Both the position numbers and the translations under genes were made by a program. This document shows positions 26,200 to 60,173 of a stretch of DNA of 64,000 nucleotides, piece after piece; positions within the stretch are counted from its first letter, which is position 1; every line of letters starts with the position of its first letter. The stretch covers positions 248,001 to 312,000 of IMG/VR virus record IMGVR_UViG_3300042923_000569; one strand, given 5' to 3'. Below the pieces are notes generated by a model, which worked only from the letters and a program-made list of their open reading frames with translations, was not told where the DNA came from and searched no databases.

Positions 26200-27447
26200 T
26201 CACGACACGGCTTCTGTGTCAAGCCTAGAAATGAATTCTTCGGCATTATCTTTACATTCCAAGAAAAGTGCTTGTAAATCACAACCAGCTTTCGTTGAGA
26301 ATGTAATATCAGGTATATTTGCATCAGGGTACATTAGTTTAATATATTCCTTGATTTCAATATCTTCTAGATATGGTATTTCATATATATAATCAACCCT
26401 TCCTTTACGCACTACTGCTGGATCAACTTTTTCAAGATGGTTAGTAGTTAAGAAGATGATAGTACCGTTCAACGAAATCACACCATCTAGTACATTAAGA
26501 ATTTTTGATAGGCTTAACATTTCCATATCAAAGATATTATCGGATTGTGCTTTTGTTTCACGGTCATGAACTGCACTACATGAATCAAAGTCTTCAATCA
26601 GTACTATACTATTAGGTGGAATAGTACTCATTGCTTTTTCAAATGATTTATTACTCATAGTTGATAAATCAATGATACAAATATTTTTATTAAAGTTAGA
26701 TGCAATTGCTTTAATAGTACTACTCTTACCAGTGCCAGGTTTTCCATGTAAAATATAAGTTTGTTTACATGCTAGACCACGAGATGTGTACCAATCAGGA
26801 TTACTATAGAAGTACTCTAGGTTTTCTAGAATTTTATCTTTAATTTCTTTTTTGAGAATTACAGAAGATAATGGACGCTTCTTAACACTTGTCAAGTACT
26901 TCCAGTCTTCACCAGCAATTGTATAAATTCCCATATCGTCTTTCTTTGGTTTATATGCGAAGTCCTGTATTAATGCCATAATAGGCTTTTGGCTTCGACC
27001 AAAGGTTTTAATTACAATATGTTGCTTTTCTTTTTCTGAACCCTGTGAGTTTAAAGATGTTTTTTCAAACCAGAATAATCTTTTATTATAGAAGAAGAAG
27101 TGTTTACCATACCCTGCACCTACCACGTATGACTCATTATTATCGTTATCACTGTACCAACCGGTATTACCATCAAGAGATAAGTATCTAGACCATTTAG
27201 CATATGGTGATTTTAAAAACCAAGACATAAAAGCTTTAAACTGAGTCTCGTTTCCGGTATGTCCTGCGTTATTAAACTCTAAACTTGTCAGTACCTGTCT
27301 TTTTACAAACATAATAAATGTTGGAATAAACTTTAGACAGTACGTTAATACACCTAATCCCCATAATGAAACTGCCCCTGCTAACCAGGGATAGGTTTTC
27401 ATTGCCAGTACTAACTGTGCGTATAATCCCGCAACAAACTCGAACAT
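26200..27447 (-). CDS. BCS1-like AAA+ ATPase with N-terminal TM segment
   Basis: RPLSSVIL...WYTSRGL...Walker A GKPGTGKS, Walker B VLIEDFD, LNVLDG, TTNH..KVDPAVVRKGRVD. Confidence 0.9.
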   Translation of the reverse strand: MFEFVAGLYAQLVLAMKTYPWLAGAVSLWGLGVLTYCLKFIPTFIMFVKRQVLTSLEFNNAGHTGNETQFKAFMSWFLKSPYAKWSRYLSLDGNTGWYSDNDNNESYVVGAGYGKHFFFYNKRLFWFEKTSLNSQGSEKEKQHIVIKTFGRSQKPIMALIQDFAYKPKKDDMGIYTIAGEDWKYLTSVKKRPLSSVILKKEIKDKILENLEYFYSNPDWYTSRGLACKQTYILHGKPGTGKSSTIKAIASNFNKNICIIDLSTMSNKSFEKAMSTIPPNSIVLIEDFDSCSAVHDRETKAQSDNIFDMEMLSLSKILNVLDGVISLNGTIIFLTTNHLEKVDPAVVRKGRVDYIYEIPYLEDIEIKEYIKLMYPDANIPDITFSTKAGCDLQALFLECKDNAEEFISRLDTEAVS

Positions 27448-39478: not shown

Positions 39479-39725
39479 CCTGCATATCTTGCAAGCGTTT
39501 CATGATTTCATCAATGAAAATCATAGCTTGTTCTTCTGATAGATTATCAGGAATTTCTAAAATCAGTTCACCTGACTCTTTCCCACTTTCAATCATATCA
39601 CGTAAACAATTATTAATCTGTTCTGCGAAATCTTCTGCGGATAGTTCAATTTTTGGTACTTCATTCATGTATGCAAAATGCATAAAATTAGTAGTCATAT
39701 AACTCTCAATAATGCTGGAATCCAT
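39462..39725 (-). CDS. hypothetical acidic protein
   Basis: ORF; start probably MTTNF. Confidence 0.65.
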   Translation of the reverse strand: MDSSIIESYMTTNFMHFAYMNEVPKIELSAEDFAEQINNCLRDMIESGKESGELILEIPDNLSEEQAMIFIDEIMKRLQDMQDDSDE

Positions 39726-39777
39726 TTTGAAGTTTTCAATTAACAGTTGAGTTCATTATGGTTGCTGATAGATTCCA
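39716..39777 (-). ncRNA. GAAUC/CAGCAA-module RNA A (minimal, Asn GUU anticodon-loop mimic)
   Basis: TGGAATC-TA-TCAGCAACCA...TCAA-CTGTTAA-TTGA...GATTCCA. Confidence 0.7.
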
Positions 39778-39783
39778 ATTTTT

Positions 39784-40788: not shown

Positions 40789-40793
40789 AAGAC

Positions 40794-40847
40794 TAGAATC
40801 TATTGTTTTTCATATATCCAATGATGTTTGATTGCTGTTAGATTCTA
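40794..40847 (-). ncRNA. GAAUC/CAGCAA-module RNA B (minimal)
   Basis: TAGAATC-TA-ACAGCAATCA...TCAT-TGGATAT-ATGA...GATTCTA; near-identical to 41113-41166. Confidence 0.7.
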
Positions 40848-40852
40848 AATTT

Positions 40853-41083: not shown

Positions 41084-41112
41084 TTAACGTCACCGTTTAT
41101 CTAAATTAAAAC

Positions 41113-41166
41113 TAGAATCCATCTTTTTTCATATATCCAATGATGTTTGATTGCTGTTAGATTCTA
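41113..41166 (-). ncRNA. GAAUC/CAGCAA-module RNA C (minimal)
   Basis: Direct repeat of RNA B. Confidence 0.7.
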
Positions 41167-41298
41167 AAAGAGAAAGTTTCAAATTGAGTTTACAGAAAGA
41201 TTTTCAAGATCTTAATACGTATTCTATTCCAACCTTATAGGATAACATGCTATCCGTATTGCACCATAGTACGCCTGGTGAATTTGAAACAAATTTTG

Positions 41299-42170: not shown

Positions 42171-42761
42171 TTATTGACCAAACTTGGTCATAGCTTCTTC
42201 TAGTGTATATGAATTTACAACTTTAATAGATGCAACATTGTATATTATTACGAATACTTCACCATTATTAAACTTGTACGTATAAGCATCATACCCAAGT
42301 TGTGTTAATGCACGAACAAATTGCGTCGGATGACTGTTATACCAATCATACCATACTGACATAAGTGCATCATACATACTATCTTCACTCATATAATTAT
42401 CGAGTGCAGTACGAATAGCACGATTTTTGTCTTCGTCCCAATTTGTATATGCTTCATCATCAGGAGTATTCTGTATTAATTTTAGCAGTACTGCCTTGTT
42501 AATTTTCTGACTTTTTGATAGTTCTTTTCTTATTGTCAATTCACATTCATAAATCATACCCGTAGGGGATTTTTCACAATACCCACGTGCAGTAATTGGA
42601 TTAGATGTGAAATATATACCTGGCCCGTATTCATCGTTACCTCTACCAACGAATTCATCGCTGAATTGTGAAATTGGATTTTGTGTACCATGATAATAGT
42701 AACCGGATAGTTTACCTTCCATGATAGAAGATATATCTTCCATCAATTTTTTCATTTGCAT
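42171..42761 (-). CDS. putative ADP-ribosyltransferase-fold protein
   Basis: YYHGT...YGPGIYFTSN...ARGY...LGYDAY...E.FVIIYN (H-Y-E type ART pattern). Confidence 0.65.
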   Translation of the reverse strand: MQMKKLMEDISSIMEGKLSGYYYHGTQNPISQFSDEFVGRGNDEYGPGIYFTSNPITARGYCEKSPTGMIYECELTIRKELSKSQKINKAVLLKLIQNTPDDEAYTNWDEDKNRAIRTALDNYMSEDSMYDALMSVWYDWYNSHPTQFVRALTQLGYDAYTYKFNNGEVFVIIYNVASIKVVNSYTLEEAMTKFGQ

Positions 42762-42790: not shown

Positions 42791-43144
42791 TTACTTCTTA
42801 AAGAATAACCATCCAAATGCTCGTACACCAGCATACATCAGTACTGCACGAGGTTTACCAACGTTGGTATCTCTTAATGCTTGCATAAGAACTGCGTCAG
42901 CCTCTTTGCGGCTTAGATTCCCATAGTGGTATAGCCAATCATGTAGGGTTGCTGCGGAATGACCACGATCCCCAACCAGCTCAAATACTACCGGAATACG
43001 AGGAACACTTGCAAAATCTGTTTCAAACCCTGCTGGTACAATAATAGTACCGTGCTTCTTATCCTCGTAAATTAAATCAGATAGTAAACGCCACTTCTTA
43101 CCTTCGTTGTTAATTAACTCTACTTTTAAATGTGTAATGAACAT
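42791..43144 (-). CDS. DUF1353 family protein
   Basis: IIVPAGFETDFASVPR...AATLHDWLY...RKEAD...MYAGVRAFG. Confidence 0.9.
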   Translation of the reverse strand: MFITHLKVELINNEGKKWRLLSDLIYEDKKHGTIIVPAGFETDFASVPRIPVVFELVGDRGHSAATLHDWLYHYGNLSRKEADAVLMQALRDTNVGKPRAVLMYAGVRAFGWLFFKK

Positions 43145-43434: not shown

Positions 43435-43459
43435 GCAATATTTCCTTTATTATAATTGC

Positions 43460-43580
43460 TGGAATTCATTTAATTTTTGACCGCTGCGTCTACCGATTTC
43501 GCCACTTGCACCGAAGTGCAAGGCAGGACTCGAACCTGCAAAAAGCTGTTTGCTATTAGTGTGTTTGCTGCTGAATTCCA
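43460..43580 (-). ncRNA. GAAUC/CAGCAA-module RNA D (circularly permuted tRNA mimic)
   Basis: TGGAATTC-A-GCAGCAAACA...T-arm GCAGG-TTCGAGT-CCTGC, acceptor CTTGCAC-TTCG-GTGCAAG, D-arm TGGCGAAATCGGTAGACGC...GAATTCCA. Confidence 0.85.
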
Positions 43581-43590
43581 AATTTATTAT

Positions 43591-44424: not shown

Positions 44425-44649
44425 TTAGAACGAATCTGGTTTAGCTACTGATCGTACTGCCGACATAAAACCTTTTTGCAGGTCAGTCCTAGCAATAGAA
44501 AGCCAACGTTGATCAATTTCTGGATTATCTTGTAGGGAATCAATAAGATCACCAACTTGGCTAGCCAAGTTTTTAATATTATTCATCGCATCAATCTCAG
44601 CCTGAGATAAATCGCGATACCCTTTAATGTGTTTGTGTTGATTATCCAT
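44425..44649 (-). CDS. acb2: anti-CBASS cyclic-nucleotide sponge Acb2
   Basis: [20 protein letters not shown]...[27 protein letters not shown] matches the Acb2 N- and C-terminal signatures as recalled. Confidence 0.9.
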
Positions 44650-44672
44650 AATCGTTATCTCTTAATTAAAAC

Positions 44673-44731
44673 TGGAATCCACATAGTCAAAGTAAAAGTT
44701 TGAGTTTTTGTGTGGTTGCTGGGGGATTCCA
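44673..44731 (-). ncRNA. GAAUC/CAGCAA-module RNA E (minimal, Lys UUU anticodon-loop mimic)
   Basis: TGGAATC-CC-CCAGCAACCA...TCAAA-CTTTTAC-TTTGA...GATTCCA. Confidence 0.72.
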
Positions 44732-44738
44732 AAACTTG

Positions 44739-44966
44739 TTATTCTACGTAGCCTAAGTAACCTACATGTACCTTTTCAGTACTCTTAGTTTTCTTGCCCG
44801 TTTCTTTATCTTCTGTGCTTACTTCACGCTCAAATACAATTGGCTCAAGTAAGACTACTTTCTTTTCTGCACCGAATACACTACTAATTTCATCATTAGA
44901 AAGTTTATCAGTACTAGTATGACGGCGTAGTGTACCATCAACTTTGTAATAATAATCGTAATACAT
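44739..44966 (-). CDS. hypothetical protein
   Basis: ORF with AAGGA SD. Confidence 0.7.
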   Translation of the reverse strand: MYYDYYYKVDGTLRRHTSTDKLSNDEISSVFGAEKKVVLLEPIVFEREVSTEDKETGKKTKSTEKVHVGYLGYVE

Positions 44967-45026: not shown

Positions 45027-45103
45027 TGGAGGGATACCAGTGGACTCGAACCACCAACGCAAGGATTTCACATCTCCGCTCTACCAATTGAGCTAGGCAA
45101 CCC
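45027..45103 (-). tRNA. atypical tRNA (8-bp acceptor, degenerate anticodon arm, identity unclear)
   Basis: Canonical D and T arms and CCA; anticodon arm GGAGA-TGTGAAA-TCCTT. Confidence 0.6.
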
Positions 45104-45395: not shown

Positions 45396-45423
45396 GGTGT
45401 GTTAAAAATTTCTAAATTAAAAC

Positions 45424-45527
45424 AAGAATCGGGTTTTTCTGTGCCTCGTAACCAACGATGAAAGGGAATTGAACCCTAAGCGGTTTTCGCCAAATGAAAT
45501 AAGATTTATGGTTGCTGTGCGATTCTT
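45424..45527 (-). ncRNA. GAAUC/CAGCAA-module RNA G (permuted, Gln UUG-like loop)
   Basis: AAGAATC-GC-ACAGCAACCA...TTTC-ATTTGGC-GAAA, T-arm AGGG-TTCAATT-CCCT, D-like TCGT-TGGTT-ACGA...GATTCTT. Confidence 0.75.
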
Positions 45528-45643
45528 TAAATTGGAGTATATATTGGTGTTCTACAGGACTAGTGATTCTCAATAAGAGACGAATGATAAGCGTCGTGTC
45601 ATATCATCCTACAATAGAGCATCAGATCTGAGCAATACATACT

Positions 45644-45974: not shown

Positions 45975-46092
45975 GAAATCTTTTCTATACGGTCATCCAG
46001 ACACAGCCTAAAAAGCAACATGGCTGCTGGGGGATCGAACCCCACCGTTTTTCATAGCAGGAAAAAAGTTTTTATGTTTGCTGTAAGATTTC
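45975..46092 (-). ncRNA. GAAUC/CAGCAA-module RNA H (permuted tRNA mimic, Ser GCU loop)
   Basis: GAAATC-TT-ACAGCAAACA...TTTTTC-CTGCTAT-GAAAAA, T-arm TGGGG-TTCGATC-CCCA, acceptor hairpin GCAGCC/GGCTGT, D-arm GTC-TGGAT-GAC...GATTTC. Confidence 0.8.
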
Positions 46093-46105
46093 GATATTGC
46101 TTCGT

Positions 46106-48700: not shown

Positions 48701-50062
48701 TTACCACTCTACACCGACACCAGCACCCCAAAGTACTTCGGACTGTGTGTTGGTACTGACCGTCACTTTCGTGGTTACAGCTTGGTTTACACGAGAACTG
48801 AAGCCTACTGCCACAGCCTGTTCACCATCATAACCACCTACGCCTGCACCCAGCATGAAATTACCATCGCGGGTTACCTGGGGAATGTTCGCCATAGCAC
48901 CGGCACCGGCAATACCTGCACTTGCAAGTTTACGGTTATCGCCCATACGTTTATCAATATCAGAGAAACGTTTGTTATTTTTGTAATCGCTGTTGTTCAT
49001 GCGATCTTCAACTTTACCAATACGCTGAGTGTTACTGGTGATACGTTCGTCATGATCAACCAGAGTACTGTCATTGTTATCGATACGTTTACTTAACACA
49101 GCATCAGCACTTTTACGCGACGATGTTTCAGCAGTTACTGAGCGTTGTACAGAAGATACCGCAGCGGTACGTTCAGTACTTTCATCGTTGATCTGTTGTG
49201 CCAATGCTTTATCTGCGTTACCACGAGTAGTGGATTCAGACTGTAATGCATTATCCTGACGTTGTTGATCTTTCAGGAAGGTATTATTATCTACCTTAGT
49301 ACTGATAACAACGTTTTGCTGGTCATCCGTAATACGCTGTTCAGCTTTGTTTTTGTCGATATTGCTTTGCAGCATTTTATCGCCAGAAACACGCTCGGAT
49401 TTTTCAACAATAAGTGCATTACTATTGTCCTGTCCCAGCCGAACACCAATATCAGCAGTGTTTTGTGCATTGATCGCATTGTTGTTGGCATTCTGACCAA
49501 TTTCAATTGCAGTCTGTGCATTATTACCTGCGTTGATTGCATTGTTATTTGCATTATGTGCCAGGTCTTTTGCTTCTTCAACACCGGCTTGTGCAGTGAT
49601 TGCCTTGTTATCGGCTGCCTGACCAATTTCAATTGCAGTTTGTGCATTGGTCATTGCATTGTTAGCGGTGTTTTGTGCATCGCTGGCTTTATTAAAAGCG
49701 TTATGACCGATGTTTTTTGCTTCTTCAACACCTGTCTGACGTTCACTGATTTCTTTCTGAAGTGCATTGTCCTGACGTTGTTGATCAACCTGGAAAACGC
49801 TCTTATCAAGTTTATCTTTTTGGAGGTTTGAAACTTGATATTCTAAATTCTTCCCGGCGGCTTCATTGTACTTAGTTTGAATTTCTTTCCACTGAGTTTG
49901 TTCTTCTTTCCATGCACGATCTTTCTCAGCGAGAAGGTTCGCATCTTGTACTTTATCGTAAGCAGTGGGAGTTTTTACACAACCACAACTTGGATCAATT
50001 GAAGTAGCATGTGCAGAAACTGAACATGCAACAATCGCCATTGCAATCAATGTCTTTTTCAT
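48701..50062 (-). CDS. YadA-family trimeric autotransporter adhesin
   Basis: Signal peptide MKKTLIAMAIVACSVSAHA (start reassigned), coiled-coil stalk with repeats, anchor GIAGAGAMANIPQ...GAGVGGYDGEQAVAVG...GAGVGVEW. Confidence 0.9.
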   Translation of the reverse strand: MKKTLIAMAIVACSVSAHATSIDPSCGCVKTPTAYDKVQDANLLAEKDRAWKEEQTQWKEIQTKYNEAAGKNLEYQVSNLQKDKLDKSVFQVDQQRQDNALQKEISERQTGVEEAKNIGHNAFNKASDAQNTANNAMTNAQTAIEIGQAADNKAITAQAGVEEAKDLAHNANNNAINAGNNAQTAIEIGQNANNNAINAQNTADIGVRLGQDNSNALIVEKSERVSGDKMLQSNIDKNKAEQRITDDQQNVVISTKVDNNTFLKDQQRQDNALQSESTTRGNADKALAQQINDESTERTAAVSSVQRSVTAETSSRKSADAVLSKRIDNNDSTLVDHDERITSNTQRIGKVEDRMNNSDYKNNKRFSDIDKRMGDNRKLASAGIAGAGAMANIPQVTRDGNFMLGAGVGGYDGEQAVAVGFSSRVNQAVTTKVTVSTNTQSEVLWGAGVGVEW

Positions 50063-50189
50063 TTTTATTACCCTGGTGTGCCGCCACATTTGGCGTGAGG
50101 TAATAATACCGTGTCGAAACATTTCGGTCAACACATTTTTTAATATAATTCAAAGAAAACTTAACCCAAATTTACATTAAAAAAGATAT

Positions 50190-51389: not shown

Positions 51390-51513
51390 TGGCGGCGAGT
51401 ACTGGATTCGAACCAGTGACCAGGACATTAAAAGTGTATGAGTTATGGTTGCTGCGGGAATCCAATCAGGATTCCTTGGGTTCTACCTGCTCTACCAACT
51501 GAGCTAACTCGCC
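51390..51513 (-). ncRNA. tRNA-Lys(UUU) interrupted by a 48-nt GAAUC/CAGCAA module (RNA I)
   Basis: Removing 51438-51485 gives a 76-nt cloverleaf with GGACA-CTTTTAA-TGTCC and CCA. Confidence 0.88.
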
Positions 51514-51885: not shown

Positions 51886-52245
51886 TTAGCTACGATTAGG
51901 TCGTGAATTTTTAATTAACTCAATGCCTGCATCAGTACATTTTTTAATATTCTGTTCGTACAGATTATCAACAACATCGGTATCTGAACTGTGAAGATAA
52001 ATCTGTTTCAGATTAGGAAACAGACCCCGCTTAAAGCGATATGTCATCATCGTTAGAATCTGACCACCAGTACGCCCACCTGAACCAGACAAGAAATTAT
52101 CCAAATGAACAACTTCGATTTCTGAAGCATTATCAAAGATAAAATTCTTTGCTTCCCACCACTCTTTCAACCAAACAATACCGTCTGATTGTTCAGCACT
52201 AAGGTGATTAGCTGGATTCCGAATATCATCTACATAGACTTTCAT
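51886..52245 (-). CDS. cyclic-phosphate-processing receiver-like domain protein
   Basis: MKVYVDDIRNP...W...EVVHLDNFL...TG...IYLHSS. Confidence 0.7.
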   Translation of the reverse strand: MKVYVDDIRNPANHLSAEQSDGIVWLKEWWEAKNFIFDNASEIEVVHLDNFLSGSGGRTGGQILTMMTYRFKRGLFPNLKQIYLHSSDTDVVDNLYEQNIKKCTDAGIELIKNSRPNRS

Positions 52246-52607
52246 TCGTGATTCTCCAGGCTATTAGCAATCAGTTCGATTCCAACTGCTTTTAGTAATT
52301 CAAAACAATTATCGAACATCATGTTAACCAAATCAGCATCAGATGAATGAAGATAAATCTGCTTGAGCTTAGGCCAAGTACTACCATCTCCCCACATCCA
52401 ATCACCAGCAACCATATAAAACAGATCCTGACCAGTAAGTTCAGGTTCATCCATATAGTTATCGAAATGGATCACTTCGATTTCAGCGGCATTTGCAATC
52501 AGGAAACTTCTTGATTCCCACCATTCTTTCAGCCAAACAATACCTTCTGACTGTTCAGGGGTAAGATGATTAACCGGATTGCGAATATCATCAATAAAGA
52601 CTTTCAT
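52242..52607 (-). CDS. cyclic-phosphate-processing receiver-like domain protein (tandem paralog)
   Basis: MKVFIDDIRNP...EVIHFDNYM...TG...IYLHSS. Confidence 0.7.
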   Translation of the reverse strand: MKVFIDDIRNPVNHLTPEQSEGIVWLKEWWESRSFLIANAAEIEVIHFDNYMDEPELTGQDLFYMVAGDWMWGDGSTWPKLKQIYLHSSDADLVNMMFDNCFELLKAVGIELIANSLENHE

Positions 52608-60098: not shown

Positions 60099-60173
60099 TG
60101 GTGCCCCTGACAGGATTCGAACCCGCGAATCACGGTTTTAGGGACCGCTGTTCTACCATAGAACGGCAGGGGC
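60099..60173 (-). tRNA. amber suppressor-like tRNA (CUA)
   Basis: GCGGT-CCCTAAA-ACCGT; full cloverleaf and CCA; C8 and C33 are non-canonical. Confidence 0.75.

What the first reader, a model, noticed from the sequence alone, without database searches (positions are those of the whole stretch)
44425..44731. Acb2 anti-CBASS gene directly preceded by a Lys-anticodon module RNA
Seen: a compact 74-aa Acb2 homolog, shorter in the middle than the Pseudomonas phage protein as I recall it, with RNA E ending 24 nt upstream of its ATG. Established: Acb2 sequesters cyclic di- and trinucleotide signals. Inference: the tRNA region doubles as an anti-defence island, which supports a counter-defence role for the module RNAs. 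RNA E could alternatively be a cis-regulatory leader.
Basis: partly seen in the sequence, partly recalled or inferred. Interest (0 to 1): 0.6.

Follow-up and report, generated by a model that had tools for sequence, protein, structure and literature searches.

The report
Acb2 gene beside tRNA-mimic RNA repeat
A jumbo phage carries an ordinary short anti-CBASS sponge gene (Acb2), and the spacer in front of it holds one copy of an apparently undescribed, conserved family of small tRNA-mimicking RNA elements that dot the phage's tRNA gene array; the two being neighbours looks incidental.

Summary
Both observations hold. ORF 44425-44649(-) is a 74-aa Acb2: Pfam PF24729 E 2e-20, PDB 8H2J E 7e-20. 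It keeps all four ligand-contact residues and lacks about 19 residues in the middle. This short form is common in phages, so the protein is a new member of a known family.

RNA E (44673-44731, -) is real. It has an 8-bp closing helix, a CAGCAACCA linker and a hairpin whose loop, CUUUUAC, has the form of a tRNA-Lys(UUU) anticodon loop. It ends 24 nt before the ATG. It is not a one-off leader. It belongs to a repeat family of 45 distinct copies in 9 GenBank phages and 3 UViGs. Copies lie in the tRNA region, within about 7 kb in the five genomes mapped. Covariation supports folding as RNA: 93% of cells paired, and U-G but never C-A. Lys-loop and Asn-loop subtypes recur across genera. Larger siblings share the same helix and linker but carry a circularly permuted, YrlA-like tRNA body. 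The family is absent from Rfam, and I found no paper on it.

The Lys copy sits next to acb2 only in this phage, XbC2 and Kaldavass. So the adjacency does not support a shared counter-defence unit. The RNA's function (tRNA mimic or decoy, or processing/stability element) is inferred, not shown.

The parts
44425..44649 (-). acb2: a 74-aa short-form Acb2 (Vs.4 family) cyclic-oligonucleotide sponge gene
   Evidence: Pfam PF24729 at E 2e-20. PDB 8H2J at E 7e-20 and T4 Vs.4 (7UQ2) at E 0.009. phrog_717 at E 8e-24. Y11, K26, R48, I52 and T55 align with PaMx33 Y11, K26, R67, I71 and T74.
44658..44663 (-). Shine-Dalgarno-like AAGAGA, 8 nt before the ATG of acb2
   Evidence: Read from the sequence. It is unpaired in the predicted fold.
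44673..44731 (-). RNA E: 59-nt member (Lys-loop subtype) of the closing-helix / CAGCAA / hairpin RNA family
   Evidence: Model R1 gives 66.5 bits, E 1e-10 to 4e-10. The element is 58/59 identical in XbC2.
44724..44731 (-). 5' arm of the closing helix (UGGAAUCC)
   Evidence: Pairs with 44673-44680. Pair probabilities are 0.93-1.0 for 7 of the 8 pairs and 0.54 for the outermost U-A. The helix is 98.9% paired over 45 distinct copies. It shows AU/GC and UA/CG/UG covariation and no C-A.
44713..44721 (-). CAGCAACCA linker motif (CAGCA is nearly invariant in the family)
   Evidence: The same motif lies in the conserved insert of the tRNA-Lys gene at 51393-51513.
44687..44703 (-). Inner hairpin UCAAA-CUUUUAC-UUUGA. 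The 7-nt loop has the form of a tRNA-Lys(UUU) anticodon loop: U33, UUU, A37
   Evidence: The stem columns covary between subtypes. The stem and loop are nearly invariant among the Lys-type copies of eight genomes. The hairpin is thermodynamically marginal.
44673..44680 (-). 3' arm of the closing helix (GGAUUCCA). It is followed by G and a U-rich stretch (44668-44672)
   Evidence: G directly after the helix is invariant in 45/45 copies. An RNWUU motif lies within 0-3 nt in 31/45 copies, against 11% background.
44739..44966 (-). Upstream 75-aa ORF (phrog_28709, unknown function). Its stop codon lies 7 nt before RNA E

Best explanation
Two separate things lie side by side.

(1) acb2 encodes a short-form Acb2 sponge. 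By homology it should assemble into an oligomer and sequester cyclic di- and trinucleotide immune signals (CBASS; in some homologs Thoeris 3'cADPR). That would blunt abortive-infection defence.

(2) RNA E is not a private leader of acb2. It is one copy of a tRNA-derived, modular RNA family that sits in the spacers of the phage's tRNA/small-ORF array. Every copy has the same 'handle': a 7-9 bp closing helix made by its two ends, a 5' CAGCAA linker, and an invariant G after the helix. The handle displays a variable 'cargo'.
- In the small copies the cargo is a hairpin. In the Lys and Asn subtypes the hairpin loop copies the tRNA-Lys(UUU) or tRNA-Asn(GUU) anticodon loop.
- In the large copies the cargo is a circularly permuted tRNA body with a T arm, a capped acceptor stem, a D arm and a split anticodon stem, as in bacterial YrlA Y RNAs.

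Shown: the family exists, is conserved across genera, folds as RNA on the gene strand, and is limited to the tRNA region.

Inferred: the copies are cut out of the polycistronic transcript as 60-130 nt RNAs. RNase P would cut at the next tRNA, and RNase E-like cuts would fall in the A/U-rich flanks. The released RNAs would act in trans as tRNA mimics through a protein that binds the handle, probably in the conflict over tRNAs.

Inferred: the position next to acb2 results from gene shuffling between repeats, not from functional coupling.
For: Acb2:
- Family match, PDB match and conserved contact residues.
- 257 of 260 matching phage records cover at least 80% of the 74-aa query. The 60 listed matches span only 213-240 nt, so the short form is common.

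RNA family:
- 45 distinct copies in G000, XbC2, Kaldavass, GAP32, CBB, BF, fHe-Yen9-03, XaC1, Munch and 3 UViGs; none in 121Q.
- In the five genomes first searched every match lies in about 7 kb of the tRNA region, with 6-11 matches per genome at E <= 0.1, weak long hits included.
- 93.3% of cells paired against 76.5% in shuffles and at most 51% when slid. At one closing pair the counts are UA 24, UG 11, CG 9 and no CA. XaC1 copies have a compensatory flip in the helix core.
- The Lys hairpin is nearly invariant and the Asn hairpin invariant where present, while the linkers vary.

Permuted tRNA-body siblings with the same handle:
- 6 genomes, 92% paired, 12 pairs with changes on both sides, 0/500 shuffles reach this.
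- A weak YrlA-model hit on the tRNA-like part (25.7 bits).

Array context:
- About 10 of 45 copies end 4-8 nt before a tRNA gene, and one sits between tRNA-Asn and tRNA-Gln.
- At least 22 of 45 start 5-12 nt after a stop codon.
- About 27 of 45 lie 15-31 nt before an ORF start.
- The RNWUU motif is enriched after the helix.

Adjacency is not conserved.
Against: - There are no RNA data.
- The inner hairpin is unstable on its own: it is unfolded in isolation, with pair probability 0.36 in RNA E and 0.003-0.03 in the other window copies.
- The overall fold energy is not unusual, z = -0.30.
- Several family loops are not anticodon-like (YGGAUAU and 8-9-nt loops). CBB's ortholog of the Lys copy has loop CCUAACC.
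- No partner protein is identified. Rsr/TROVE and RtcB are absent from the genome.
- A closing hairpin persists before acb2 in GAP32, CBB, BF and fHe-Yen9-03 (not Munch) even where the cargo is lost. That fits a cis role for the helix.
- Acb2 ligand binding and oligomerisation are inferred from homology only. The dimer + cGAMP co-fold gave no verdict.
Confidence: 0.5

Rival explanations
1. RNA E acts only in cis, as an intercistronic processing or stability element. The closing helix, followed by G and a U-rich stretch, would protect the 3' end of the upstream mRNA or define and stabilise the 5' end of the acb2 mRNA. It might also act as a leaky terminator. The inner hairpin would be inherited baggage from a tRNA ancestor.
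For: - The element fills the spacer tightly: the upstream stop codon is 7 nt away and the start codon lies 23 nt downstream. The same holds for most copies.
- A helix made from the same arm sequences persists upstream of acb2 in GAP32 and CBB without the hairpin. In BF and fHe-Yen9-03 it appears as a canonical terminator-like GGATTC-GAAA-GAATCC + T6.
- The A/U-rich RNWUU motif is enriched right after the helix.
- The inner hairpin is thermodynamically marginal.
Against: - It does not explain why the Lys and Asn hairpins stay (nearly) invariant across genera while the linkers drift.
- It does not explain why siblings with the same handle carry a five-helix permuted tRNA body maintained by covariation.
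- It does not explain why copies stand directly in front of tRNA genes, or between two tRNAs, like members of the array.
- The terminator scan did not call RNA E. The Shine-Dalgarno site is not sequestered.
Confidence: 0.27
2. The family is a DNA-level repeat or a decaying relic. One version is a PeSL-like recombination cassette or MITE-like element that shuffles small ORFs such as acb2. The other version is pseudo-tRNA debris. Neither has an RNA function of its own.
For: - The copies are repeated, have terminal inverted repeats, lie in a hyperplastic region of small ORFs, and gene content between copies differs among genomes.
- BF has a 'flipped' collapsed hairpin, as expected from a deletion between two copies.
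- Parts of the copies resemble tRNA pieces, and model R1 aligns the 3' arm to T loops.
Against: - Mismatches in the helix are only U-G on the gene strand (11 U-G, 0 C-A), which points to RNA pairing.
- Subtypes sit at syntenic places in different genera rather than at scattered sites, and none lies outside the tRNA region.
- PeSLs are defined by a sigma-70 promoter with a 17-nt spacer after a stem-loop (PMC4122927). No such promoter is found here.
- The permuted tRNA body shows 12 compensatory pairs.
Confidence: 0.13
3. One reading: RNA E and acb2 form one counter-defence unit. RNA E would be either a co-regulated decoy or a dedicated regulatory leader of acb2.
For: Direct adjacency (24 nt) is kept at 58/59 identity in XbC2 and also in Kaldavass. 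Both could in principle serve counter-defence.
Against: - Adjacency is absent in GAP32, CBB, BF, fHe-Yen9-03 and Munch, which all have acb2. Among them, intact Lys-type copies elsewhere were seen in GAP32, BF and fHe-Yen9-03.
- XaC1 has Lys-type copies, but its locus beside the copies shows no acb2 and it is not among the 60 listed acb2 matches; the other 200 were not inspected.
- Sibling copies precede unrelated ORFs and tRNAs.
Confidence: 0.05

Closest known systems
Acb2 of Pseudomonas phage PaMx33 (PDB 8H2J/8IXZ) and T4 Vs.4 (PDB 7UQ2)
   Same: Same Pfam family (PF24729). The first 41 residues are nearly identical to PaMx33 Acb2. Y11 and K26 (cyclic-dinucleotide pocket) and R67, I71 and T74 (cyclic-trinucleotide pocket) are conserved.
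   Different: The window protein has 74 aa against 93. It lacks about 19 residues between the two long helices, so it corresponds to the bare 58-position hairpin core. Binding and oligomerisation are untested for this form here.
YrlA, bacterial Y RNAs with a tRNA-like module (Rfam RF02553; PMC4201824)
   Same: Both are modular RNAs whose 5' and 3' ends form a helix that carries a tRNA-like cargo. The large siblings of RNA E have the same permuted order: T arm, capped acceptor stem, D arm.
   Different: RNA E itself has no T arm, D arm or acceptor stem. The best YrlA-model score in the genome is 25.7 bits against a gathering score of 69. The phage encodes no Rsr/Ro60 or RtcB. The helix sequence and the CAGCAA linker are specific to this family.
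Phage tRNAs that evade tRNA-cleaving defence (T5 tRNA-Lys/Thr/Asn against PARIS AriB; PMC11464382, PMC12409363)
   Same: Both are encoded in a phage tRNA array. [quoted passage not shown]
   Different: The T5 RNAs are complete, decoding tRNAs that replace cleaved host tRNAs. RNA E has no tRNA body and cannot decode. AriB also reads the D loop, which RNA E lacks. No Thr(UGU) subtype was seen.
PeSL promoter/stem-loop cassettes of T4-type phages (PMC2839356, PMC4122927)
   Same: Both are short conserved repeats in front of small ORFs in hyperplastic regions. Both are associated with gene gain and loss between related phages.
   Different: PeSLs are a stem-loop followed by a sigma-70 promoter (-35, N17, -10). 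Here the two arms enclose 35-110 nt, no such promoter is found, and copies also precede tRNA genes.
tRNA-like processing signals and 'armless' tRNAs (plant mitochondrial t-elements, mascRNA, nematode mitochondrial tRNAs), from my own knowledge
   Same: These are tRNA-derived structures embedded in polycistronic transcripts. The layout is a helix plus an anticodon-arm-like hairpin without D and T arms.
   Different: RNA E has no 3' CCA or discriminator context and no evidence of RNase P cleavage. Its connectors are much longer than in armless tRNAs. In the large siblings the acceptor stem is capped, so it is not a processing substrate.

Membership tests
Acb2 / Vs.4 sponge family | Sequence match to the Acb2/Tad1 hairpin domain above the curated cut-off | tested here: met
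   PF24729 at 73.1 bits against a cut-off of 27, E 2e-20, profile positions 1-58 of 58. PDB 8H2J at E 7e-20.
Acb2 / Vs.4 sponge family | Cyclic-dinucleotide pocket residues (PaMx33 Y11 and K26) | tested here: met
   Y11 and K26 are present at the aligned positions. Their roles are taken from PMC10312549.
Acb2 / Vs.4 sponge family | Cyclic-trinucleotide pocket residues (PaMx33 R67 and T74, plus A70/I71) | tested here: met
   R48, T55 and I52 align with R67, T74 and I71. A70 is S51 here.
Acb2 / Vs.4 sponge family | Homo-oligomer (hexamer) that forms the pockets between protomers | tested here: inconclusive
   The dimer + 3'3'-cGAMP co-fold scored 0.28 (median) against a mark of 0.32: no verdict.
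Acb2 / Vs.4 sponge family | Binding of cGAMP/cA3 and rescue from CBASS | not testable with these tools
   Needs ITC or native gels and plaque assays.
Canonical tRNA | Cloverleaf with acceptor, D, anticodon and T arms | tested here: not met
   ARAGORN and Rfam RF00005 tRNAs in the window but nothing at 44673-44731.
YrlA / Y RNA | Match to RF02553, and a cognate Rsr (TROVE) protein | tested here: not met
   No hit on RNA E. The best hit in the genome is 25.7 bits against 69, on the sibling at 43483-43546. PF05731 is absent.
PeSL cassette | Stem-loop followed by a sigma-70-type promoter with a 16-18 nt spacer, then Shine-Dalgarno site and ATG | tested here: not met
   The promoter scan lists no site in 44650-44740 on the - strand. 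The best -35-like TTGACU has only about a 14-nt spacer to any -10-like hexamer (read from the sequence).
Intrinsic terminator | G+C-rich short hairpin directly followed by a U run | tested here: not met
   Not called at RNA E. The arms are 43 nt apart. The positional counterpart in BF and fHe-Yen9-03 does look like a terminator.
Closing-helix / CAGCAA / hairpin RNA family (model R1, defined here) | 7-9 bp helix xGAAUCy...xGAUUCy, 5' CAGCA(A), inner 4-5 bp hairpin, G after the helix | tested here: met
   66.5 bits, E about 1e-10, all 67 model positions. All the features are present in the sequence. RNA E was among the seed sequences, so the score is partly by construction. The independent support is its near-identity to the XbC2 and Kaldavass copies and its similarity to the BF, GAP32 and XaC1 copies.

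The most novel reading that the evidence does not exclude
The jumbo phage and its relatives encode a Y-RNA-like system of modular tRNA mimics. A shared handle (closing helix + CAGCAA + G) would bind one phage or host protein. It would display either an anticodon arm (Lys UUU, Asn GUU) or an anticodon-less tRNA body. The mimics would titrate or misdirect host factors that recognise tRNAs, for example anticodon nucleases of the PrrC or PARIS type. This would be counter-defence carried out by RNA rather than by replacement tRNAs.
Probability: 0.2. Interest if true: 0.85.

Novelty: new variant of a known kind. Interest (0 to 1): 0.5.

Why it matters
The Acb2 gene adds little. It is one more member of a family with more than 4,000 known homologs, although it shows that the minimal 74-aa hairpin form keeps both ligand pockets.

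The RNA is the interesting part. Phage tRNA arrays are now seen as counter-measures to tRNA-cleaving immunity. This array also holds a conserved, covarying family of non-tRNA RNAs that copy parts of tRNAs: exact Lys and Asn anticodon loops, or a capped, permuted tRNA body. If these RNAs are expressed and act in trans, they would be a new class of phage non-coding RNA. They would also give a direct way to ask whether phages use RNA decoys against tRNA-directed defence. If they act only in cis, they would still show how long tRNA/ORF transcripts are punctuated in jumbo phages.

Tried and rejected
- Thermodynamic test of RNA E alone: z = -0.30, no signal.
- Rfam at gathering and at E-value thresholds: nothing on RNA E, only a chance snoRNA hit at E 1.4.
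- Exact 59-mer scan of IMG/VR: 0 hits.
- Loose pattern scan of IMG/VR: 119+ loci. Of the 80 loci listed and re-scored with the model, only 4 contigs held true members, so most hits are chance.
- Sigma-70 promoter or terminator inside or after RNA E: not called. I also checked hand-found -35/-10 combinations; their spacers are too short.
- Permuted or split tRNA reading of RNA E itself: rejected, because there is no T-stem partner. It holds only for the larger siblings.
- JBD67 Acb2 as a tested short form: wrong. Its ORF is 108 aa.
- Rsr/TROVE and RtcB as partners: absent from the genome.
- Complex prediction (Acb2 dimer + 3'3'-cGAMP): no verdict, neither for nor against binding.
No RNA evidence could be gathered, and read laying was not used.
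- Literature searches for a description of this RNA family found nothing relevant.
- The large protein searches were not run, because Pfam and PDB settled the protein. No alternative genetic code was used.
Full report
**Setting.** The window is bases 248001-312000 of a complete 357,873-bp virus record with direct terminal repeats. Its nearest GenBank relative over this locus is Xanthomonas phage XbC2, genus Mimasvirus, the genus of Cronobacter phage GAP32 and Pectobacterium phage CBB. Bases 24.6-62 kb of the window form a tRNA array. ARAGORN finds 26 tRNA genes and Rfam 27, all on the minus strand and interspersed with small ORFs.

**The protein.**
- ORF 44425-44649 (-) encodes 74 aa. It matches Pfam PF24729 (Acb2/Tad1 hairpin domain) at E 2e-20 over the whole 58-position profile, and phrog_717 at E 8e-24.
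- Against solved structures the best match is p26 of phage PaMx33, the founding Acb2 (8H2J, 93 aa), at E 7e-20. T4 Vs.4 (7UQ2) follows at E 0.009.
- In that alignment the first 41 residues are nearly identical. Gaps of 12 and 7 residues then remove the middle of the PaMx33 protein, and the C-terminal helix aligns again.
- The published contact residues are all present at the aligned positions: Y11 and K26 for cyclic dinucleotides, and R67, T74 and I71 for cyclic trinucleotides (PMC10312549). Here they are Y11, K26, R48, T55 and I52.
- The short form is not rare. In a tblastn search of 50,697 phage records, 257 of 260 matching records cover at least 80% of the query. The 60 listed matches span only 213-240 nt, in jumbo phages, T4-like phages, Vibrio phages and Pseudomonas phages.
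- Acb2 homologs number over 4,000, and some also bind 3'cADPR (PMC12393519).
- The protein is therefore a new member of a known family. Its mode of action (oligomeric sponge) is inferred from homology. My one co-fold attempt gave no verdict.

**RNA E is there as described.** On the minus strand, 44731-44673 reads UGGAAUCC-CC-CAGCAACCA-CACAAAAAC-UCAAA-CUUUUAC-UUUGA-CUAUGU-GGAUUCCA.
- The 8-bp terminal inverted repeat occurs once in the window, against 0.00 expected.
- The 7-nt loop has U at position 2, UUU, then A, which is the form of a tRNA-Lys(UUU) anticodon loop.
- The last base is 24 nt from the A of the ATG.
- The fold energy is unremarkable (z = -0.30), and neither ARAGORN nor Rfam calls anything here. 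The case for RNA E therefore rests on comparison with related sequences.

**Comparison turns RNA E into a family.**
- In XbC2 the same spacer is 58/59 identical, while the surrounding 558 nt are 78.9% identical.
- Searching for the CAGCAACCA motif and the GAATC/GATTC arms found siblings in the window at 39712-39781, 40790-40851 and 41109-41170. Related but larger or looser versions lie at 43452-43588, 45420-45528, 46031-46098 and inside a tRNA-Lys gene at 51393-51513.
- An 18-sequence alignment gave a covariance model, R1.
- Searches of whole phage records with R1 gave 45 distinct copies in G000, XbC2, Kaldavass, GAP32, CBB, BF, fHe-Yen9-03, XaC1, Munch and three uncultivated contigs. None was found in 121Q.
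- In the five genomes first searched, every match lies within about 7 kb of the tRNA region. A pattern scan of the whole 358-kb genome found no convincing copy elsewhere.

**Structure of the family.** On the 45 distinct copies, 93.3% of cells form standard pairs. Shuffled partners give 76.5%, and partners slid by one to three columns give at most 51%.
- The closing helix is 98.9% paired. Its outer pairs alternate A-U/G-C and U-A/C-G/U-G.
- At one position there are 11 U-G and no C-A. This is what pairing in RNA on the gene strand predicts, and pairing in DNA does not.
- XaC1 copies have the helix core flipped (GGAUUCUU...AAGAAUCC), again compensatory.
- The inner hairpin columns covary between subtypes (UCAAA/UUUGA, UCAA/UUGA, UCAU/AUGA, UUCU/AGAA, UUUCA/UGAAA). 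This is covariation between paralogous subtypes.
- The hairpin is weak. It is unfolded in isolation, with pair probability 0.36 in RNA E and 0.003-0.03 in the other window copies.
- CAGCA after the 5' arm is nearly invariant. A G directly after the 3' arm is invariant in 45/45 copies and is followed by Y-N-U-U.

**Subtypes.**
- The loop CUUUUAC/CUUUUAA on the stem UCAAA/UUUGA occurs in G000, XbC2, Kaldavass, GAP32, BF, fHe-Yen9-03 and XaC1.
- The loop CUGUUAA on UCAA/UUGA occurs in G000, XbC2, Kaldavass, GAP32, CBB, BF, fHe-Yen9-03 and one UViG.
- By my recollection of the E. coli sequences, CUUUUAA and CUGUUAA are the anticodon loops of tRNA-Lys and tRNA-Asn. This was not checked against a database here.
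- Within these subtypes the hairpin is (nearly) invariant while the linkers differ. That indicates purifying selection on the hairpin sequence.
- Other loops (YGGAUAU, CUUAUCU, and 8-9-nt loops) are not convincing anticodon loops. CBB's ortholog of the Lys copy has CCUAACC. So 'anticodon module' fits two subtypes, not the whole family.

**Larger siblings.** At window 43452-43588 (-), and at orthologous places in XbC2, Kaldavass, GAP32, BF and XaC1, the same closing helix and CAGCAA linker enclose a larger cargo. It consists of a T arm (GCAGG-UUCGAGU-CCUGC), an acceptor stem capped by a short loop, U8-A9, a D arm and the two strands of an anticodon stem. Together these form a circularly permuted tRNA body with no anticodon loop.
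- On six sequences, 92% of cells pair and 12 pairs change on both sides, which 0 of 500 shuffles reach. Slid controls give at most 46%.
- This is the layout of bacterial YrlA Y RNAs. The Rfam YrlA model gives its best hit in the genome on exactly this tRNA-like part, but at 25.7 bits it is far below the gathering score of 69.
- The phage has no Rsr/TROVE and no RtcB.
- The tRNA-Lys(UUU) gene at 51393-51513 carries a 48-nt insert between positions 28 and 29 of the anticodon stem. The insert holds a hairpin and CGCAGCAACCAUA.
- In XbC2 and Kaldavass the insert is kept. Its hairpin is replaced by a fully different but still complementary sequence, the CAGCAACCA stretch is unchanged, and the tRNA stems covary.
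- RNA E aligns with the part of this gene that runs from the second hairpin arm through the anticodon loop. This suggests common descent.

**Context of the copies.**
- About 10 of 45 copies end 4-8 nt before a tRNA gene (Ile, Gln, Leu).
- One GAP32 copy sits 3 nt after tRNA-Asn and 8 nt before tRNA-Gln, like a member of the array.
- About 27 of 45 lie 15-31 nt before an ORF start.
- At least 22 of 45 begin 5-12 nt after a stop codon.
- An RNWUU motif lies within 0-3 nt after the helix in 31/45 copies, against 11% at random positions. By my own knowledge this is the RNase E preference.
- None of this shows processing. It makes excision plausible, with RNase P cutting at the next tRNA and RNase E-like cuts in the flanks.

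**Is the adjacency to acb2 meaningful?**
- The Lys copy directly precedes acb2 only in G000, XbC2 and Kaldavass.
- In GAP32 and CBB the element before acb2 keeps the closing helix but has lost the hairpin. GAP32 still shows CAGCA|UUACUUUG, as after a 21-nt deletion. GAP32's intact Lys copy lies about 0.8 kb upstream, before GAP32_432; the corresponding CBB copy before CBB_451 has loop CCUAACC.
- In BF and fHe-Yen9-03 only GGAUUC-GAAA-GAAUCC + U run remains, and the Lys copy precedes another small ORF.
- In Munch acb2 overlaps its upstream ORF.
What persists before acb2 in all of these but Munch is a hairpin built from the arm sequences. That keeps a cis role for the helix in play.

**Is the tRNA region an anti-defence island?** Most ORFs have no family match. 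The recognisable ones are these:
- Acb2.
- An ART-PolyVal ADP-ribosyltransferase at 42171-42761.
- Two tandem cRec-domain proteins at 51886-52607. These are predicted cyclic-phosphate/cADPR-processing enzymes linked to RNA ligases (PMC7824862).
- A GNAT-like protein.
- Outside the window, a T4 Rnl1-type RNA ligase.

Together with the tRNAs this fits a conflict-related region, but that reading is inference.

**Weighing the explanations.**
- A purely cis explanation accounts for the tight spacing and for the persistence of the helix. It does not account for the invariance of the Lys and Asn hairpins, for the five-helix permuted tRNA bodies on the same handle, or for copies standing among tRNAs.
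- A DNA-repeat or relic explanation is contradicted by the U-G-only mismatches, the syntenic conservation and the compensatory changes.
- I therefore favour a family of modular tRNA-mimic RNAs released from the array transcript, with RNA E as the Lys-anticodon-arm member (confidence about 0.5). I treat the neighbourhood with acb2 as a product of shuffling between repeats.
- A decoy role against tRNA-directed nucleases is attractive. [quoted passage not shown]
- That role is unproven. AriB also needs D-loop contacts that RNA E lacks, no Thr subtype exists, and no expression data could be obtained.

**Novelty.** Acb2 is known. The RNA family is absent from Rfam 15, and I found no paper on it in the library. 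The closest described kinds are YrlA-type tRNA mimics and tRNA-like punctuation elements. I rate the finding a new variant of a known kind, of moderate interest. The interest lies in the RNA family as a whole rather than in its juxtaposition with acb2.

Noticed in passing
window 43452-43588 (-); orthologs at L008:1179-1311, L029:1496-1628(-), L030:1496-1634, L031:1496-1633, L172:1659-1794: A circularly permuted, YrlA-like tRNA mimic. The same closing helix and CAGCAA linker as RNA E enclose a T arm, an acceptor stem capped by a short loop, a D arm and a split anticodon stem, with no anticodon loop. Over 6 phages 92% of cells pair and 12 pairs change on both sides. There is a weak YrlA-model hit of 25.7 bits. 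The genome has no Rsr or RtcB.
   Followed up: partly
window 51393-51513 (-): A tRNA-Lys(UUU) gene of 121 nt with a 48-nt insert between positions 28 and 29 of the anticodon stem. The insert holds a hairpin plus CGCAGCAACCAUA. It is conserved in XbC2 and Kaldavass, where the hairpin is fully replaced by a compensatory sequence and the tRNA stems covary. ARAGORN misses the gene. It is unknown whether the insert is an intron or an extra arm.
   Followed up: partly
window 51886-52245 and 52242-52607 (-): Two tandem paralogs with the cRec domain (PF20274, E 8e-10 and 3e-8). The domain is predicted to process 2',3'-cyclic phosphate or cADPR and is linked to RNA ligases (PMC7824862). They lie just upstream of the insert-bearing tRNA-Lys gene. 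A T4 Rnl1-type RNA ligase lies elsewhere in the genome, at G000:201200-201838.
   Followed up: partly
window 42171-42761 (-): A 196-aa protein with an ART-PolyVal ADP-ribosyltransferase domain (E 7e-10), 1.7 kb downstream of acb2. It is followed by a DUF1353 protein at 42791-43144.
   Followed up: no
window 45420-45528 (-) and 46031-46098 (-): Intermediate family members. The first has a closing helix, CAGCAACCA, a hairpin with loop AUUUGGC, a T-arm-like hairpin and a small capped stem. The second has GAAAUC-UUA-CAGCAAACA, a hairpin with loop CUGCUAU (a Ser GCU-like anticodon), a T arm and an acceptor-like 3' strand.
   Followed up: partly
L005:2455-2500 (Serratia phage BF) and L007:2462-2506 (Yersinia phage fHe-Yen9-03): Upstream of acb2 these phages have GGATTC-GAAA-GAATCC followed by a T run. 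The arms are in the opposite order to RNA E, as if a deletion had joined the 3' arm of one copy to the 5' arm of the next. It looks like an intrinsic terminator.
   Followed up: no
window 48701-50134 (-): A 477-aa ORF ending in a YadA-like membrane anchor domain (PF03895, E 1e-19). This is a trimeric-autotransporter anchor encoded inside a phage tRNA region.
   Followed up: no
window 26200-27447 (-): A 415-aa protein with BCS1_N + AAA ATPase domains (E 3e-17 and 6e-17) in the tRNA region.
   Followed up: no
window 60102-60173 (-): Rfam calls a tRNA here (50.6 bits) that ARAGORN did not list. The ARAGORN tRNA-Ser at 45027-45103 is weak in Rfam, at 35.1 bits.
   Followed up: no
L172 (Xanthomonas phage XaC1, record 328574-329823): XaC1 has five family copies, two of them with the closing-helix arms swapped. 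They are clustered next to a gene annotated as head maturation protease, and no tRNA gene is annotated in the 3-kb stretch.
   Followed up: no
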